A stretch of DNA of 64,000 nucleotides from Isurus oxyrinchus (Eukaryota): NCBI GenBank assembly GCA_026770705.1, contig JANJGN010000009.1, positions 79,794,001 through 79,858,000 on the forward strand. Direction: 5' to 3'. Every line of letters begins with the position of its first letter. The stretch's first letter is position 1. The notes below the pieces were generated by a model. That model saw only the letters and a list, made by a program, of their open reading frames with translations, made no database searches and was not told where the DNA came from. The position numbers and the translations under genes are program-made. Shown here piece after piece: positions 31,101 to 51,567 of this stretch.

Positions 31101-31934
31101 TTGGTAAACACTGCGTTCTAACCTCTCAAACTAATGCAAAGCTCCCCATTTGCGTGCATACATAAGCATGTATAAGTCAGCAATTTAAAACAAAAAATAA
31201 ATGTATAAAACACCTTTATTCATGGACTCAGATCCTTGAGGCCTAGCCATGGATAAATCAAAGCATCTGAGAGATTCTATTCTAAATGGGCAGGCATTGT
31301 AGCAATTTCTGCCAGCCGATCATGAACATGTATGAGCTCTGAGACTTGAGAAGCCAACACAGTAAGGCAGACAGTGTAATGTAAATTCTAATTAGCCATT
31401 CCATTTTAACTTCTCAGTGTTATTATCATTCCCCAATGATATAATTCAAACATGAGGCATTTAGAATGGTGCATTATGCTCAACAGTTTATACCTCCAAC
31501 AGATCAGTGCACCTAATGCCTTGAACTATCACTATCTTGAAGTTGGTCTCTTCTCTGCCAAACATATCAAATAATAACCATGATACAAACCCCCCGGAGC
31601 AGCATGAAAGCTGCTACCAATTAGGAGAGAGATAGAGTCAGATTCTAAGATCAAAGGAAAATTATATTATAGAATCCTGAAAGTATTCAAATTTACTTTT
31701 CTGCAGAGTTGCTTACGTAGATGGTGTGTTTTTTGGGGGGCGGGGGTGAAATGGAGGAAGATTTACCAACACGGATGGCAAAAAACAGAATATGAGAATA
31801 ACAATATTTTTGACATTTTCTTGTACAATCAGACACTTCTGCTCTTGCTAAAGCAACTTGCAACATTAACAAAGGACGAATGTTTGTCATGCTATGACCG
31901 GTTGAGTTAATCCTCCATAAAATAGGTGGGAAAG

Positions 31935-32844
31935 TAAGTTGCAATGAAGAAATAAGAAATTTACAAATGGATATGGACAGGTTAGGTGAATGGGCCAAAA
32001 TTTGGCAGATGGAGTTTAACATGGATAAGTGTGAGGTTATCCATTTTGGTCAGAAGAATAAAAAGGTGCCTTATTATTTAAATGGAGAGAAACTTCAGAA
32101 TGCTTGAGTGCAGAGGGATCTGGGTGTCCTCATGCATGAATCACTGAAAGCTAGTATGCAGGCACAGCAGGTAATAAGGAAGGCAAATGGAATTTTGGCA
32201 TTTATTGTTAAAGGAATAGAATATAAAAATAGGGAAGTGTTGTTGCACCTGTACAAGGCATTGGTGAGACCGCACCTGGAGTTCTGTGCACAGTTTTGGT
32301 CCTCTTACTTCAGGAAGGATGTAGTTGCTTTGGAGGCGATTCAGAAGAGGTTCACTAGATTGATTTCAGAGATGCGGGCTTTGTCTTATGAGGAGAGATT
32401 GAACAGTTTAGGCCTATACTTGCTAGAGTTTAGAAGGATGAGAGGAGATCTAATTGAGGTGTGTAAGGTGCTAAAGGAGATAGACTAAGTAGATGTGGAA
32501 CGGACGTTTCCCCTTGTGGGGCATTCTAGAACGAGAGGCCATAGATTTAGGCTAAGGGGTGGTAGATCTAAATCAGATATGAGGAGGAATTACTTTTCTC
32601 AAAGGGTCGTGAATCTGTGGAATTCACTATCTCAGAGTTCAATGGATGCCGGGGTGCTGAATTAATTTAAGGAGGGGATAGACAGATTTTTAATTAGTAA
32701 TGGGTTGAAAGGTTATATGGAGAGGGCGGGAAATTGGAGTTGAGGCTGAAATGAGATCAGCCATGATCGTATTGAATGGCGGGGCAGGCTCGAGGGGCTG
32801 AATTGCCTACTCCTGCTCCTAGTTCTTATGTTTTCCTATGTTCT
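31935..32844 (+). mobile_element. CR1 LINE 3' ~900 bp
   Basis: ORF 32108-32488 (QRDLGVLMHESLK...LYKALVRPHLEFCAQFW), CR1 3' UTR and ttcttatgtt...cctatgttct tail. Confidence 0.9.
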
Positions 32845-45323: not shown

Positions 45324-47131
45324 TTAAAATATGAAGTTATGTCATCAATCCAGCTAAACAAGGTTAGATACAGTCACATGGCATCAAAAAATATTTTGCT
45401 TGAACAAGGTCAGAAATATGCCTGAAGCTCAAAATTAATTTTCCTTAACAAAAACAATCTTGAAGCATTTCTTTTTCTAAACTGCTTTCCTGAATATGAA
45501 AGACACATCAAGTGGGAACACAGTTAGAATTAAGATTGGCTGCAATGTCCTCCCATCCCCACATGACTCCCCATCAACTAGCATATTAAGGCTCAGATAT
45601 GAGATTATAATCTGGCCTAGGAACCACTTCTCAGCAAGGAATAAATGCCATCAGGAATGGTGAGGAAAAACCTGAGGGAGGGTAGAACCTCCTCTTCCTT
45701 AAAAGCACAGTAGGAGTTCAGCTAAGGGCAATAAACAACCATCTAGGGCATGGCAAGTCAAATTAGAGCCATTAAAATCAGGACATCTGTTACTTCTTTT
45801 ACAAAAACAGTTATTGTCCTCTTTCTCAATCAGGATTCTTTACTGCTGCTTTATTTGGTAATCTAATTCTGATACCTAAAATGGATGCCAATCCCTGATA
45901 TTGCAAGTGTACAGAGATTAATCCCCAGGCAGATTGGTAGAAAGGAGCCAAAAGCAGCTGTGAACAGTGAACTGATAAAAGAATAATGCTTCTATTTCCT
46001 CAAAAAAAATTTGGCAGATATTCATCTGTGCCTGCTTTCAACTCCTGACTGGAACGCATGCCCAACAGCAAAGTCCAAGGCCGACCCAAAGTTGAACCTT
46101 GGGCATCATTTCCCTACCTTTGGGAAGCTTCTACCACAGGCAGCTGGCCTTTTTGAGAAAATAAATTTAGTGTTGCTTGCCTCACCAGCAGCGGCCCTCA
46201 GGTAAAAGAGGCAGTTGCAAAGATAGTGGATGCGCTGGTTATAATTTTTCAAAATTCTTTAAATTCTAGAATGGTCCCAACTGATTGGAAATTAGCAAAT
46301 GAAACACCGCTATTCAAAAAAATGAGGGAGAGCGAAAACAGGCCAGTTAGCCTGACATTCGTCAGGAAATTGCTAGAATCTATTAAGGAAGTTTTAACAA
46401 TGCACTTAGAAGTCATAGCACATTCAGACAAAGTTGGCATGGTTTTACAAAAGCAATATATGTTTGATGAAATTATTAGAATCTTTCAATGTGTAACTAG
46501 TAGGTTAGAGAAACGGGATCCAGAAGATGTGGTAAAATTAAATTTCCAAAAGGCATTTAATAGGGTGTCATAGAAAAGGTTAATACACAAGATAAGGGCT
46601 CATGGAGTTGGGTGTGATATATTAGCATGGATAGAAGATTAGTTAATGGACAGGAAGCAAAGAGTAGGGATAAATGGGGCATTTTCAAGTTGGCAGTTGT
46701 GACTAGTAGAGCGCTGTAATGATCAGTGTTAGGGTCTCAGCTATCTATGATCTATATTAATCAACTTAGATGAAGAGACAGAGTAATGTATCCAAGTTTG
46801 CGGATAATGTAAAGCTAGATGGGAATGTAAGCTGTGATGAGGACACAAAGAGGCAGCAAAGGGATATAGACAGGTTAAGTGAATAGGAAAATAAGGTGGC
46901 AGACAGAATGTAATGGTGGAAAATTGAGGTTATTCACTTTTATAAATAAGAATAGAGAAGTAGAATAACTGACTATCAACTTTCACACCTTTTAAGAGGG
47001 ACTTGGTGTAATTCTTTCGAGTACAAACACATTTCCATCTGTTTCAGATGAATTTACATTGTTTCATAGTTTGCCATTGTGAGATTTGAATTCTTGATCT
47101 TGGGGTTACAAACCCAGTACCATAACCACTT

Positions 47132-50070
47132 CAAAAACAGAATTACCTGGAAAAACTCAGCAGGTCTGGCAGCATCGGCGGAGAAGAAAAGAGTTGATGT
47201 TTCGAGTCCTCATGACCCTTCGACAGACCTTGAGTTCGAGTCCAAGAAAGAGCTGAAATATAAGCTGGTTTAAGGTGTGTGTGGGGGGTGGGGGTGCGGA
47301 GAGAGAGAGAGAAGTGGAGGGGGGGGGTGTGGTTGTAGGGACAAACAAGTAGTGATAGAAGCAGATCATCAAAAGATGTCAACAACAATAGAACAAAAGA
47401 ACACATAGGTGTTAAAGTTGGTGATATTATCTAAACGAATGTGCTAATTAAGAATGGATGGTAGGGCACTCAAGGTATAGCTCTAGTGGGGGTGGGGAGA
47501 GCATAAAAGATTTTAAGATATTTAAAAATAATGGAAATAGGTGGGAAAAGAAAAATCTATATAATTTATTGGGGAAAAAAAGGGAGGGGGAAACAGAAAG
47601 GGGGTGGGGATGGGGGAGGGAGCTCACGACCTAAAGTTGTTGAATTCAATATTCAGTCCGGAAGGCTGTAAAGTGCCTAGTCAGAAGATGAGGTGTTGTT
47701 CCTCCAGTTTGCGTTGGGCTTCACTGGAACAATGCAGCAAGCCAAGGACAGACATGTGGGCAAGAGAGCAGGGTGGAGTGTTAAAATGGCAAGCGACAGG
47801 GAGGTTTGGGTCATTCTTGCAGACAGACCGCAGGTGTTCTGCAAAGCGGTCGCCCAGTTTACGTTTGGTCTTTCCAATGTAGAGGAGACCACATTGGGAG
47901 CAACGAATGCAGTAGACTAAGTTGGGGGAAATGCAAGTGAAATGCTGCTTCACTTGAAAGGAGTGTTTGGGCCCTTGGATGGTGAGGAGAGAGGAAGTGA
48001 AGGGGCAGGTGTTGCATCTTTTGCATGGGCATGGGGTGGTGCCATAGGGGGGGGTTGAGGAGTAGGAGGTGATGGAGGAGTGGACCAGGGTGTTCCGGAG
48101 GGAGCGATCCCTACGGAATGCCGATAGGGGGGGTGAAGGGAAGATGTGTTTGGTGGTGGCATCATGCTGGAGTTGGCGGAAATGGCAGAGGATGATCCTT
48201 TGATTGCGGAGGCTGGTGGGGTGATAAGTGAGGACAAGGGGGACCCTATCATGTTTCTGGGAGGGAGGAGAAGGCGTGAGGGCGGATGCGCGGGAGATGG
48301 GCCGGACACGGTTGAGGGCCCTGTCAACGACTGTGGGTGGAAAACCTCGGTTAAGGAAGAAGGAGGACATGTCAGAGGAACTGTTTTTGAAGGTGGCATC
48401 ATTGGAACAGATGCGACGGAGGCGAAGGAACTGAGAGAATGGGATGGAGTCCTTACAGGAAGCGGGGTGTGAGGAGCTGTAGTCGAGGTAGCTGTGGGAG
48501 TCGGTGGGTTTGTAATGGATATTGGTGGACAGTCTATCACCAGAGATTGAGACAGAGAGGTCAAGGAATGGAAGGGAAGTGTTAGAGATGGACCACGTGA
48601 AAATGATGGAGGAGTGGAGATTGGAAGCAAAATTAATAAATTTTTCCAAGTCCCGACGAGAGCATGAAGCGGCACCGAAGTAATCATCGATGTACCGGAG
48701 AAAGAGTTGTGGAAGGGGGCCGGAGTAGGACTGGAACAAGGAATGTTCCACATACCCCATAAAGAGACAGGCATAGCTGGGGCCCATGCGGGTACCCATA
48801 GCCACACCTTTTATTTGGAGGAAGTGAGAGGAGTTGAAGGAGAAATTGTTCAGTGTGAGAACAAGTTCAGCCAGACAGAGGAGAGTAGTGGTGGATGGGG
48901 ATTGTTCGGGCCTCTGCTCGAGGAAGAAGCTAAGGGCCCTCAGACCATCCTGGTGGGGGATGGAGGTGTAGAGGGATTGGACGTCCATGGTGAAGAGGAA
49001 GCGGATGGGGCCAGGGAACTGGAAATTGTTGATGTGACGTAAGGTGTCAGAGGAATCATGGATGTAGGTGGGAAGGGACTGGACAAGGGGAGAGAGAAGG
49101 GAGTCAAGATAACGAGAAATGAGTTCTGTGGGGCAGGAGCAAGCTGAGACGATCGGTCTACCGGGGCAGTTCTGTTTGTGGATTTTGGGTAGGAGATAGA
49201 AGCGGGCCGTCCAAGGTTGGGCGACTATTAGGTTGGATGCTGTGGGAGGAAGATCCCCAGAGGAGATGAGGTCAGTGATAGTCCTGGAAACAATGGCTTG
49301 ATGTTCAATGGTGGGGTCATGGTCCAGGGAGAGGTAGGAGGAAGTGTCTGCAAGTTGATGCTCAGCCTCCACGAGGTAGAGGTCAGTGCGCCAGACAACA
49401 ACAGCACCACCCTTGTCAGCGGGTTTGATGACAATGTCAGTGTTGGACCTGAGAGAATGGAGTGCAGTAAGTTCAGAGAGAGACAGGTTAGAATGGGTGA
49501 GAGGAGCAGAGAAATTGAGACGACTAATGTCGCGCCGACAGTTCTCAATGAAAAGATCAAGAGAAGGTAAGAATCCAGAGGGAGGGGTCCAGGTGGAGGG
49601 AGAATATTGGAGATGGGTAAAAGGATCCGTTGAACTGGGAGAGGACTCCTGCCCAAAGAAGTGAGCACGGAGACGAAGACGGCGGAAGAAGAGTTCAGCA
49701 TCATGCCAAGCCCGAAATTCATTGAGGTGAGGGCGTAAGGGTATGAAACTAAGTCCTTTACTGAGCACTGAACGTTCAGCATCGGAGAGGTGAAGGTCAG
49801 GGGGTATAGTGAATACACGGCTGGGGTTGGGATTGGAAGATGGGGTGGGGACGGAGGGACGGGCAGGGGTGGAGGGTCCTAGGTGTCGGTGTTGGTGTCG
49901 ATGAGTTGTTGGAGCTTGCGTTCCTTAGCACTTGAGAGAAAGAGAAAAAGTTTCTTGTTGAGGCGTCGGATGAGCCGAAGAATAAAATGAAACTGGGGGC
50001 ACGCGCAGCTTTGAAAAAGGGTACGACGGTGCTGCTGGAGCAAGAGGTCGAGTGTGTTCATATGGCGGCG
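47132..50070 (-). mobile_element. 5'-truncated Penelope-like retroelement (Neptune-type)
   Basis: 11-bp TSD CATAACCACTT (47121-47131, 50071-50081), RT plus GIY-YIG ORF, and a 3' region with a hammerhead motif at 47191-47230. Confidence 0.93.
47681..49768 (-). pseudogene. Penelope-like RT + GIY-YIG endonuclease ORF (695 aa open, premature stop)
   Basis: Motifs IKPADKGG, FTMDVQSLYTSIP, GVAMGT, RYIDD, Cys linker CPCKRCNTC (Neptune-like) and LVYCIRC...LYIGKT. CGA>TGA at 47681 truncates the conserved ...RLGTLQPSGLN tail seen in the 1.2-kb copy. The upstream N-terminal piece (49879-50070) is separated by a stop. Confidence 0.9.
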
Positions 50071-50912
50071 CATAACCACTTGGCTATTTAGGCCAAGCCA
50101 GGGACTTGGTGTAACTCTTTTGAGTACAAATACATTTCCATCTGTTCCTATTCAGATGAAGTTACATTGTTTCCCATTGTGAGATTTGAACTCTTGATCT
50201 TACAAACCCAGTACCATACCCACTTGGCTATTTAGGCCAAGCTAGGGACTTGGTGTAACTTTTTCGAGTACAAACACGTTTCCGTCTCTTCCTATTCAGA
50301 TGAAGTTACATTGTTTCATAGTTTGCCATTGTGAGATTTGAACTCTTGATCTTGGGGTTACAAGCCCAGTACCATAACCACTTGGCTATTTAGGCCAAGC
50401 CCAATAATTATATTGTTTCATAGTTTGCCATTGTGAGATTTTTTTGAACTCTTGATCTTGGGGTTATAAACCCAGTACCATAACCACTTGGTTATTTAGG
50501 CCAAGTGTGGGACTTGGTGTAACTCTTTCGAGTACAAACTCGTTTCCATCTGTTTCAGATGAAGTTACATTGTTTCATAGTTTGCCATTGTGAGATTTGA
50601 ACTCTTGATACTCTTTCGAGTACAAACCCATTTCCATCTGTTTCAGATGAAGTTACATTGTTTCATAGTTTGCCATTGTGAGATTTGAACTCTCGATCTT
50701 GGGGTTACAAACCCAGTACCATAACCACTTGGCTATTTAGGCCAAGCGTGGGACTTGGTGTACTTGTACAAGAAACATGGAAAATTAGCATGCAGGTGTG
50801 GCAAGCAATTAAGGTAAATGGCACATTGGCCTTTATTGCAAGGGGGGTTGGAGTACAAAAGTAGCCTTACTACAATTGTACAAGGCTTTGGTGAGACCAC
50901 ATCTGGAATACT

Positions 50913-51567
50913 GGGCAGAATTTTTCACTTGAACGGGCGCTTACTTGCTCAACCTGCTCGAGTGTAAAATAGTGCATGATGACGTCGGGTGAGCATCCCG
51001 ACGTCATCACGCACTCACGCGATATTTCGGTCAGTGGGAACGCACTAAACTCAGAAGCGGTCCTGTCAACAATTAAGAGGTCAAAAAAGCCCATTAATGT
51101 CACAATTAACAGAAATTTTTTGTTGCCTGGCTAAAGTCATGGCTGGCAGGCGGGCAAATTGGGCAGGCAGCCTTTCCATTTTTCATGAAACCTTGCCCAT
51201 GGGCGGGATGAAGTTTCCATAATAAATTAAAATAAAAATAAATTTCTGTTTGTAACATTTTCATTACTTACATTTTCAGGTGACTGATTATGAAGCTTGG
51301 ACACTATTTTTCTGGTTTCTGTGACCTTTATTTTAGGTTGTTCAGGTCATCAGCTCCCTGTGGCAGCTCTCTGCCTTCGGCAAGCTTTCTGTGAGCGCTC
51401 ACCCACGCCCGCACTGACTCCAGTGCCCGCCCTCCTTCCGATCCCCCACCATTAATTGGCCAGTCAGCATGAATTCGCAGTCGGGAGCTGATCGCGGTTC
51501 ATGGTCTGTTCCCCGGCCATCCTGGACCTGCCGATCGCACCCACCCATCGACCTAAAAATCCTGCCC
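50913..51567. mobile_element. Harbinger-type MITE inserted in CR1
   Basis: TIRs GGGCAGAATTTT / AAAATCCTGCCC with TSD ACT. CR1 reading resumes after it. Confidence 0.88.

What the first reader, a model, noticed from the sequence alone, without database searches (positions are those of the whole stretch)
46998..50762. Repeat-punctuated SINE array: one 13-bp host site apparently hit again and again
Seen: GGGACTTGGTGTA occurs five times (46998, 50101, 50245, 50509, 50750). It is part of the host CR1 coding sequence (the RDLGV region; CR1 resumes ...ggtgta|cttgtacaag after the last copy), not of the SINE. Four co-oriented blocks of a tRNA-derived SINE lie between the copies, always joined to the 13-mer at the same base. 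The units are not clones: two loop variants (ctgtttcag vs ctgttcctattcag), private deletions, and four different head junctions (gcCA, gcTA, gtGT, gcGT), with the duplication 14 bp in copies 1-3 and 13 bp in copies 4-5. Inference: this is what serial target-primed insertions at the same nick would leave, each re-duplicating the target, giving a CRISPR-like direct-repeat/insert architecture. A possible driver is that the SINE end (...GAAAGAGT-TAC) shares microhomology with the target, so each insertion improves the site. I do not recognise the family or its partner LINE.
Basis: partly seen in the sequence, partly recalled or inferred. Interest (0 to 1): 0.82.

Follow-up and report, generated by a model that had tools for sequence, protein, structure and literature searches.

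The report
Shark SINE stacked repeatedly at one site
Six copies of a small tRNA-derived jumping element sit head to tail at one spot inside an old LINE gene of a shark, most likely because the element landed at the same DNA nick again and again, a habit already described for similar elements in crocodilians and flies.

Summary
GGGACTTGGTGTA occurs five times, exactly, at the stated places. It belongs to the host LINE: a paralogous LINE copy in the window carries it once.

Between the copies lie six monomers, not four, of a minus-strand tRNA-Thr-like SINE. One monomer is split by a 2.9-kb Penelope-like element.

Public reads show tens of thousands of genomic copies. These end at ...GAGTTACA, so only 4 of the 13 letters overlap the SINE end. 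Both hairpin-loop variants are abundant genome-wide. Apart from one CpG column and two subfamily markers, every substitution difference between units is private to one unit. Both irregular junctions have one edge at a SINE terminus.

I read this as repeated target-primed insertion at one nick: at least three events, possibly six. Early unequal exchange is not excluded.

The kind is known. Tandem SINEU-3 copies "sandwiching a TSD" by sequential insertion are reported in crocodilians, and R1 arrays in Drosophila. The CRISPR likeness is only architectural.

Reads also show many other head-to-tail SINE pairs with short spacers of their own. The scan noted similar SINE multimers elsewhere in this genome.

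The parts
46226..46997 (+). Left part of the decayed host LINE (reverse-transcriptase region, many stops)
   Evidence: ORF 46226-46573 reads like a LINE RT N-terminal region, but Pfam gave no hit at E 0.01. 46816-46940 aligns at 71% to a paralogous LINE copy at 31923-32047.
46998..47010 (+). 13-mer copy 1 (target-site copy next to the left host flank). Its last 4 letters overlap the SINE 3' end.
   Evidence: Exact match. Aligned to the paralog's RDLGV codons.
47007..47131 (-). Unit u1, 3' part (short-loop form)
   Evidence: Alignments.
47132..50070 (-). Penelope-like retroelement inserted into u1 and 5'-truncated. It is flanked by the 11-bp duplication cataaccactt (47121-47131 and 50071-50081).
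   Evidence: 695-aa ORF at 47681-49768 on the minus strand. Pfam RVT_1 28.7 bits (cut-off 29.6) and GIY-YIG 19.8 bits (cut-off 22.6). In one search, 1273 X23 reads run on past 50073 with a 0.92-agreement consensus, so genomic copies extend further. The duplication was read.
50071..50098 (-). Unit u1, 5' part (head), followed on the + strand by one extra letter (50099) and the 14th duplicated letter (50100)
50101..50113 (+). 13-mer copy 2
50110..50242 (-). Unit u2 (long-loop form, with private 6-nt and 8-nt deletions)
   Evidence: In one search, 71 of 160 reads have TTGGGG put in behind 50199.
50245..50257 (+). 13-mer copy 3
50254..50400 (-). Unit u3a (long-loop form, full length). Two extra letters lie at 50401-50402.
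   Evidence: Rfam tRNA 24.3 bits at 50324-50395. Alignments.
50403..50506 (-). Unit u3b: full head, 3'-truncated within the tail, joined to the head of u3a with no 13-mer between. 50403-50411 may be decayed SINE sequence or filler.
   Evidence: TRF period 106.
50509..50521 (+). 13-mer copy 4
50518..50609 (-). Unit u4a: headless (5'-truncated, starts beside the B box) with a complete 3' end
   Evidence: TRF period 88, 2.0 copies, 96% matches. Alignments.
50610..50747 (-). Unit u4b: full head. Its tail ends at ...GAAAGAGT and is joined directly to u4a. Two extra letters lie at 50748-50749.
   Evidence: Rfam tRNA 30.0 bits at 50671-50742. In one search, 1516 X23 reads have loose ends behind 50747, which marks the family's 5' end.
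50750..50762 (+). 13-mer copy 5, continuous with the right host flank
   Evidence: An X1 contig of 152 nt covers 50725-50845 with 1 other letter (table 8).
50763..50924 (+). Right part of the host LINE (reads ...LVQETWKISMQVWQAIKVNGTLAFIARG...)
   Evidence: Translation and a 68% match of 50750-50924 to the paralog at 32115-32297.

Best explanation
A roughly 148-nt tRNA-Thr-derived SINE was inserted repeatedly by target-primed reverse transcription at one and the same nick in an old LINE copy. The nick lies on the + strand just after ...GGACTTGGTGTA.

In this model the left host flank and the 13-mer serve as primer each time. The last four letters pair with the UACA end of the SINE RNA. Each new copy therefore enters between the left-hand 13-mer and the tail of the previous copy. 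Where the second-strand break lay 13-14 nt to the left, the 13-mer was duplicated again.

Read this way, six events explain every junction. From oldest (right) to youngest (left):
1. u4b: full length, TSD 13.
2. u4a: 5'-truncated, no TSD.
3. u3b: full length, TSD 13.
4. u3a: full length, with loss of about 50 nt of u3b's tail.
5. u2: TSD 14.
6. u1: TSD 14.
Later a Penelope-like element landed in u1.

Shown: the host origin of the 13-mer, the SINE's genome-wide ends, two genome-wide subfamilies inside the array, and the star-like pattern of differences.

Inferred: the order and number of events (at least three; six is the full reading), and that the SINE's own 3' end restores the nick site. The partner LINE is unknown here. 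A Tx1-type partner is suggested only by unchecked notes of this scan.
For: 1. The 13-mer is host sequence. It is present once in a paralogous LINE copy, where the left and right flanks meet.

2. Genome-wide SINE ends (X23 raw reads). 1069 reads have loose ends before 50518 and 1379 before 50610, with flank agreement of only 0.34-0.39. 1516 reads have loose ends behind 50747. The family therefore runs from GCTTGG... to ...GAGTTACA, and 9 of the 13 letters are not SINE. Depth is about 2000-2700 per read direction over u4, against 116-496 in the bins that hold 13-mers 2 to 4.

3. The long-loop form is not a local mutation. About 950 reads per direction lie on u3a's loop bin, and no 5-nt 'left out' row appears among the shown rows. 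Those reads carry u2's letters at 50284 (1924 of 2008) and 50288 (1900 of 2080). The array thus holds members of at least two genome-wide subfamilies.

4. Star-like differences. Of 16 variable columns inside the units, 14 have only singleton minority letters. One is a CpG column. One (column 130) splits u4a/u4b from u1/u2/u3a, which is compatible with the split given by the loop indel. In all 15 flagged SINE places the genome-wide majority restores the letter held by the other units. No shared derived change of the kind expected from late local duplication was seen.

5. Irregular junctions. The left edge of the 88-bp repeat (u4a/u4b) falls at the SINE 3' end. The u3a/u3b junction keeps a complete u3a head plus two extra letters. 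Both fit insertion-coupled 5' truncation and target deletion.

6. Variable 5' junctions: 13 or 14 nt duplicated, with 1-2 extra letters.

7. Precedent. Tandem SINEU-3 copies 'sandwiching a TSD' are ascribed to sequential insertion (PMC4494074). TSD-bearing tandem junctions and tail-to-internal junctions are taken as marks of multiple insertion (PMC5932611).

8. Other loci. Joints run from a SINE head to 50518 with 0-17 other letters between. 12 rows of 5c were shown (7 of them head-to-50518) and 724 were not. About 143 X23 reads show the direct joints listed.
Against: - The two right-hand full units (u3b, u4b) share the same two extra letters at the head, and u1/u2 share a near-identical head junction. 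Duplicates made by unequal exchange would look the same.
- All five 13-mers are identical, while the units differ from each other by 3-9%. I estimate about 2 changes would be expected in 65 letters, so this is not significant.
- Private changes show no gradient from u4b to u1, so the proposed order of events has no independent support.
- The primer-side sequence here does not resemble the weak genome-wide flank consensus (TTAAGAAGA before TGTA). Why this site was re-used is therefore unexplained.
- One search listed only the best-supported rows (140 other-letter rows, 398 joints and 724 between-letter rows were not shown). Reads were also assigned to the most similar unit.
- No genomic copies could be aligned or put in a tree, and no run was shown to span the array.
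Confidence: 0.58

Rival explanations
1. Double insertion followed by unequal exchange. Two or three independent insertions at the same site gave a short tandem. Unequal sister-chromatid or homologous exchange, plus a deletion and an 88-bp duplication, then raised it to six units.
For: - u3b and u4b share the same head junction, and u1 and u2 have nearly the same one.
- Neighbouring units share states: the long loop in u2 and u3a, and column 130 in u4a and u4b.
- This is the route proposed for the R1 array in Drosophila (PMC5932611).
- u4a and u4b are the closest long pair, at 85 of 88.
Against: - No shared derived substitution links any pair. The only shared states are genome-wide subfamily markers and a CpG site.
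- u1 and u2 have similar head junctions but different loop forms, so similar junctions arise independently.
- The edges of both irregular junctions coincide with SINE termini, which random exchange or deletion does not predict.
Confidence: 0.26
2. One insertion, then purely local tandem amplification by slippage or exchange between the two TSD copies. Later gene conversion from other genomic SINE copies made the units look different.
For: - A direct repeat of 13 nt flanking one SINE is a possible substrate.
- The five 13-mers are identical.
Against: - It needs conversion events to import the long-loop form and the column-130 state, both genome-wide variants.
- It needs 13-bp and 14-bp duplications and three different extra-letter sets at the heads.
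- No shared derived changes were seen.
Confidence: 0.07
3. One retrotransposition event made the whole concatemer. The reverse transcriptase jumped from the 5' end of one SINE RNA to the next, copying the target repeat in between.
For: - Direct head-to-tail joints with 0-4 letters between are common in genomic reads (about 143 X23 reads in the listed rows). These fit template jumping.
- All units look similar in age.
- Unchecked notes of this scan describe chained SINE transcripts elsewhere.
Against: - Template jumping explains direct joints but not an exact 9-10-nt copy of the local target at three internal junctions.
- A template for that copy would have to be revisited after each unit.
- A headless unit in the middle of a single cDNA is awkward to explain.
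Confidence: 0.06
4. Assembly artefact: a single SINE insertion expanded by misassembly.
For: No run was shown to span the stretch.
Against: - The units differ by 3-9% and carry private indels, which collapse or expansion errors do not create.
- An X1 contig covers the right junction 50725-50845 with 1 other letter.
Confidence: 0.03

Closest known systems
Tandem SINEU-3 insertions in crocodilians (partner Tx1-Mar LINEs), Kojima 2015, PMC4494074
   Same: SINE copies lie in tandem 'sandwiching a TSD' and are explained by sequential insertion at the same target inside another transposon (passages read).
   Different: - That case has an snRNA-derived head, a defined target in Mariner-N4_AMi used genome-wide, mostly pairs, and a partner LINE shown by shared target preference.
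- This case has a tRNA-Thr head and up to six units.
- The target here is a LINE coding motif not shown to be a general target, and the partner is not identified.
- The supplementary figures of that paper were not seen.
R1 tandem array and P/hobo tandem dimers in Drosophila (double-insertion model), McGurk and Barbash 2018, PMC5932611
   Same: [quoted passage not shown] Tail-to-internal junctions come from 5'-truncated non-LTR copies. Deletions and later TE insertions occur inside the array (passages read).
   Different: - R1 is an autonomous, strictly site-specific LINE in rDNA, and its array then expanded by unequal exchange to megabase size.
- This case is a small array of a non-autonomous SINE.
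- Here no sign of later expansion was seen.
Alu insertion next to or into the A-rich tails of older Alus (recalled from memory; no paper read here)
   Same: The inserted element's own 3' end recreates a good nick site, giving head-to-tail SINE pairs.
   Different: That case rests on the L1 endonuclease's taste for TTTT/AA and poly(A) tails. Here there is no A tail, and the shared letters are TACA.
CRISPR arrays
   Same: Only the layout: a constant short repeat alternating with inserts, probably added at one end.
   Different: - The genome is eukaryotic and has no cas genes.
- The 'repeat' is host target sequence and the 'spacers' are copies of one mobile element.
- No adaptive function is implied.

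Membership tests
tRNA-derived SINE | tRNA-like head with an internal pol III promoter region | tested here: met
   Rfam tRNA 30.0 bits (gathering score 29) for u4b and 24.3 bits for u3a, over the full model 1-71. ARAGORN called no tRNA gene, as expected for a decayed acceptor stem.
tRNA-derived SINE | Short, non-coding, dispersed in very many copies | tested here: met
   The unit is about 148 nt. X23 raw reads pile to about 2000-2700 per direction on u4, against 32-53 in the flank bin 50764-50799, from about 3% of the run. There is no other copy in this 64-kb window.
tRNA-derived SINE | 3' tail shared with a partner LINE | not testable with these tools
   No LINE 3' end with this tail is in the window, and the genome is not searchable here. 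Scan notes name a Tx1 LINE, unchecked by me.
Sequential same-site insertion (TSD-sandwich tandem, as SINEU-3 or R1) | The spacer between units is a copy of the local target that also flanks the array | tested here: met
   The same 13-mer lies at both ends and at three internal junctions. It is single-copy in the paralogous LINE.
Sequential same-site insertion (TSD-sandwich tandem, as SINEU-3 or R1) | The units are independent copies, not duplicates of each other | tested here: inconclusive
   Two genome-wide subfamilies are present, and no shared derived changes appear among the shown rows. No tree with genomic copies could be built, and two pairs share head junctions.
Sequential same-site insertion (TSD-sandwich tandem, as SINEU-3 or R1) | Tail-to-internal junctions from 5'-truncated copies | tested here: met
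   u4a starts beside the B box and abuts the 3' end of u4b.
Sequential same-site insertion (TSD-sandwich tandem, as SINEU-3 or R1) | The target is preferred by the element family, or by its LINE, genome-wide | tested here: not met
   The flank consensus before TGTA in genomic reads is TTAAGAAGA, with agreement 0.34-0.39. The local primer side, GGGACTTGG, does not resemble it. Whether this LINE motif is hit elsewhere was not testable.
Satellite-like array grown by unequal exchange | Neighbouring units share derived mutations and the period is regular | tested here: not met
   14 of 16 variable columns have only singleton minority letters, and the shared states are family-wide variants. Unit lengths and junctions are irregular.
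Penelope-like element (the 2.9-kb insert) | Reverse transcriptase followed by a GIY-YIG endonuclease in one ORF | tested here: inconclusive
   Both domains were found in the right order but just under Pfam's cut-offs: RVT_1 28.7 bits against 29.6, and GIY-YIG 19.8 against 22.6. No hammerhead was reported by Rfam at E up to 1 in 46900-50900.

The most novel reading that the evidence does not exclude
The SINE is its own landing pad. Because its 3' end (…GAGTTACA) reproduces the letters on the far side of the nick, every inserted copy leaves a ready-made nick site at its tail. Insertions would then pile up head to tail. Genomic reads suggest that a few per cent of all copies of this family sit in such pairs, directly joined or with short spacers of their own. 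That would be a retrotransposition-driven route from a dispersed SINE to nascent satellite DNA in a vertebrate, perhaps run by a target-specific Tx1-type LINE.
Probability: 0.3. Interest if true: 0.6.

Novelty: new member of a known kind. Interest (0 to 1): 0.36.

Why it matters
The array is a clear vertebrate example, with up to six layers, of a mobile element re-using one nick. Every junction type is preserved: TSDs of 13 and 14 nt, a 5' truncation, a target deletion and extra letters.

It can serve as a worked example of how dispersed SINEs start tandem arrays. It also gives a concrete DNA substrate for testing the cleavage preference of the unknown partner LINE: left flank, 13-mer, then either the SINE tail or the original host sequence.

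It does not reveal a new kind of system.

Tried and rejected
- I looked for other SINE copies or a LINE 3' end with the same tail in the window, using four patterns with up to 3 mismatches. Only the array units matched. No flank or TSD table and no tree with outside copies could be made.
- ARAGORN found no tRNA gene in the window.
- Rfam at E up to 1 found only the two tRNA-like heads in 46900-50900 and no hammerhead.
- Pfam found nothing in the host ORF 46226-46573, so the 'CR1' label stays untested.
- The idea that the 13-mer is part of the SINE is rejected for 9 of its 13 letters.
- The idea that the long loop is a local mutation spread by duplication is rejected.
- RNA folding of the tail: z = -2.5 for u4a's last 83 nt, where the 3' end GAGUUACA pairs with UGUAACUU; z = -1.9 for u2's tail; z = -0.3 for the whole of u3a. 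This is suggestive only.
- Literature. Searches for 'Tx1, SINE, shark' (7 papers) and 'SINE, elasmobranch, tRNA-derived, LINE' (10 papers) listed no title or abstract describing this SINE or a shark Tx1-SINE pair. A table in PMC3747384 (passages read) lists HE1, SacSINE1 and SINEX-1_CM/SINE2-1_CM with CR1-type or HER1 partners. I could not compare sequences.
- (listing only) gave nothing closer than the two papers used.
- Two findings look-ups gave nothing further.
- Array support in other individuals: one search listed only one relevant contig (X1, right junction), and no listed piece spans the stretch.

Full report
**What is there.** The 13-mer GGGACTTGGTGTA occurs exactly five times on the + strand, at 46998, 50101, 50245, 50509 and 50750. 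The only other match within two mismatches in the 64-kb window is unrelated.

The repeats between these copies are a SINE on the minus strand. Rfam's tRNA model matches the heads of two units over its full length: 30.0 bits (gathering score 29) at 50671-50742, and 24.3 bits at 50324-50395. The anticodon-loop letters read UGU, which is Thr by the standard code. ARAGORN calls no tRNA gene.

Alignment of the pieces shows six monomers, not four. In SINE sense, from right to left on the + strand, they are:
- u4b (50610-50747): full head. Its tail ends at ...GAAAGAGT.
- u4a (50518-50609): headless. It starts beside the B box.
- u3b (50403-50506): full head, 3'-truncated.
- u3a (50254-50400).
- u2 (50110-50242): carries two private deletions.
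- u1 (50071-50098 plus 47007-47131).

TRF sees the two compound blocks as periods 88 and 106.

u1 is split by a 2.9-kb element at 47132-50070, flanked by an 11-bp duplication read. The element carries a 695-aa minus-strand ORF. The ORF has RVT_1 and GIY-YIG matches just below Pfam's cut-offs. That domain order is the mark of Penelope-like elements, by established knowledge. Reads show that genomic copies of this element extend beyond 50073, so this copy is 5'-truncated.

**The 13-mer is host sequence.** BLAST of the two flanks against the window finds a paralogous LINE copy at 31923-32297. In the alignment, the left flank and the right flank meet at a single copy of the homologous run GGGATCTGGGTGTC at 32115-32128, which reads QRDLGVLMHE. 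The host reads ...EGLGVLVQETWKISMQV... across one copy of the 13-mer. The clade name CR1 was not tested, since Pfam found nothing in the one host ORF tried.

**Genome-wide copies.** No other copy of the SINE lies in the window. I therefore used public reads.

One search listed 19 runs from 6 studies that hold at least half of the sampled words of 46500-51300. Organisms are coded; earlier notes of this scan call the genome a shark.

I laid 49900-50950 on three sets of Logan contigs (X1, X5, X16) and one set of raw Illumina reads (X23), at 85% likeness. In X23:
- 1069 reads have loose ends before 50518 and 1379 before 50610. The flank consensus agrees only 0.34-0.39.
- 1516 reads have loose ends behind 50747, with agreement 0.33.

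The family therefore runs from GCTTGG... to ...GAGTTACA. The last four letters of the 13-mer (TGTA, which is TACA in SINE sense) coincide with the SINE's 3' end, and the other nine do not. The two letters at 50748-50749 are extra.

Depth is about 2000-2700 per read direction over u4. It is 116-496 in the bins holding 13-mers 2 to 4, and 32-53 in the LINE flank bin 50764-50799. This comes from about 3% of the run. My estimate of tens of thousands of copies assumes a genome of a few gigabases.

In the predicted fold of the tail, the 3' end GAGUUACA pairs with an upstream UGUAACUU (z = -2.5). That fits TACA being part of the element.

**Are the units copies of each other?** Pairwise identity is 91.0-96.6%.

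Of 16 variable columns inside the units:
- 14 have only singleton minority letters;
- one is a CpG column;
- one (column 130) separates u4a/u4b from u1/u2/u3a.

The only shared indel is the 5-nt longer hairpin loop of u2 and u3a.

One search shows that the long loop is a genome-wide form. About 950 reads per direction lie on u3a's loop bin, and no 5-nt 'left out' row appears among the listed rows. Rows with as few as 6 reads were listed, though 2 rows were not shown. Those reads carry u2's letters at 50284 (1924 of 2008) and 50288 (1900 of 2080).

At all 15 flagged SINE places the genome-wide majority letter is the one held by the other units. Each unit therefore differs from its family consensus by private changes. 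No shared derived change of the kind expected from late local duplication was seen. The caveat is that 140 other-letter rows were not shown.

**Junctions.**
- The tail side is the same in 4 of 4 cases: 13-mer, then ACTCTTTCG or a variant of it.
- The head sides differ. u1 and u2 have one extra letter and a 14-nt duplication. u3b and u4b have two extra letters (the same two) and a 13-nt duplication. u3a has two other extra letters and no 13-mer.
- The left edge of the 88-bp repeat coincides with the SINE's 3' end.
- The u3a/u3b junction keeps a complete u3a head.

Both irregular junctions thus have one edge at a SINE terminus. Target-primed reverse transcription predicts this, through 5' truncation and target deletion. 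A random later duplication or deletion does not.

**Mechanism proposed.** The + strand is nicked after ...GGTGTA. Its 3' end pairs with the UACA end of the SINE RNA and primes cDNA synthesis. The second-strand break 13-14 nt to the left gives the duplication.

After an insertion, the left flank and 13-mer are intact, and the letters to the right of the nick are again TGTA, now from the SINE tail. The same bond can therefore be nicked again. Each new copy enters at the left end.

Six such events, listed under Best explanation, account for every junction. At least three are needed if local duplication is allowed but recombination is not. At least two are needed if hybrid units are allowed.

What is shown:
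- the host origin of the 13-mer;
- the family's ends;
- two subfamilies inside the array;
- star-like divergence.

What is inferred:
- the number and order of events;
- the role of the SINE end in restoring the site.

**Against this reading.**
- u3b and u4b share their head junction, and u1 and u2 nearly so.
- There is no age gradient.
- The five 13-mers are all identical. About two changes would be expected, so this is not significant.
- The local primer side does not resemble the weak flank consensus TTAAGAAGA. The reason for re-use of this site is therefore open.

**Other loci.** One search lists joints from a SINE head (places 50098-50101, 50243-50244, 50401-50404, 50747-50748) to 50518.
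- Some have no letters between. About 143 X23 reads support the listed rows, against 2448 loose 3' ends at the two listed boundaries.
- Others have 5-16 other letters between, different in each row. 12 rows were shown (7 of them head-to-50518) and 724 were not.
- About 91 X23 reads cross 13-mer copy 2. The reads that differ there carry at least 6-7 further differences.

Head-to-tail pairs of this SINE, joined directly or with short spacers of their own, therefore seem common in the genome. Whether those spacers equal their own flanking TSDs could not be checked.

Unchecked notes of this scan describe multimers of a tRNA-Thr SINE and stacks of a Tx1 LINE at single sites elsewhere in this genome. 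One follow-up there found homing only weakly supported.

**Comparison with what is known.**
[quoted passage not shown] It says they are more likely made by sequential insertion, with Tx1-Mar LINEs sharing the target. It also says other Tx1 groups prefer (TTCC)n, (TTTC)n or (TTC)n repeats.
- McGurk and Barbash 2018 (PMC5932611, passages read) describe the double-insertion model. R1 tandems are separated by identical duplications of rDNA. TSDs sit inside the tandem junctions of P elements. Tail-to-internal junctions of non-LTR elements are taken as marks of separate insertions.

The present array is a further, unusually deep example in a shark SINE. The CRISPR comparison is one of layout only.

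My searches found no paper on this SINE or on a shark Tx1-SINE pair (listings only). Supplements were not seen.

**Verdict.** The finding is a new member of a known kind and of moderate interest.

Noticed in passing
window 47132-50070: A 5'-truncated Penelope-like element with an uninterrupted 695-aa RT + GIY-YIG ORF (47681-49768, minus strand) is inserted in SINE unit u1, flanked by an 11-bp duplication. Genomic reads pile up on its 5' part at about 1300 per direction, so the family is abundant.
   Followed up: partly
window 31923-32297: A second, diverged copy (68-71%) of the same LINE family as the host. It has the RDLGV site uninterrupted and served as the empty-site comparison.
   Followed up: yes
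window 50518 and 50610 (flanks of genomic copies): Loose-end consensus of genomic SINE copies just outside the 3' end reads TTAAGAAGA before TGTA (TCTTCTTAA after TACA in SINE sense). This is a weak purine-rich / TTC-like flank preference, reminiscent of microsatellite-targeting Tx1 groups.
   Followed up: no
window 50401-50404 joined to 50518 (reads from other loci): 129 X23 reads (54, 20, 39 and 16) join a SINE head directly to a SINE 3' end with 1-4 letters between. Direct SINE dimers therefore exist elsewhere in the genome, possibly by template jumping.
   Followed up: no
window 50616: 12-16 contigs per run leave the SINE tail at 50616 and continue with TAAATGAAAACCAAA... (agreement up to 0.96). 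Another repeat family seems to share the first few letters of the SINE tail.
   Followed up: no
window 50866-50913: Read depth jumps to about 1900 per direction in 50872-50907, with high-agreement loose ends on both sides (0.8-0.9). This is a short, highly conserved stretch of the host LINE family or an overlapping repeat.
   Followed up: no
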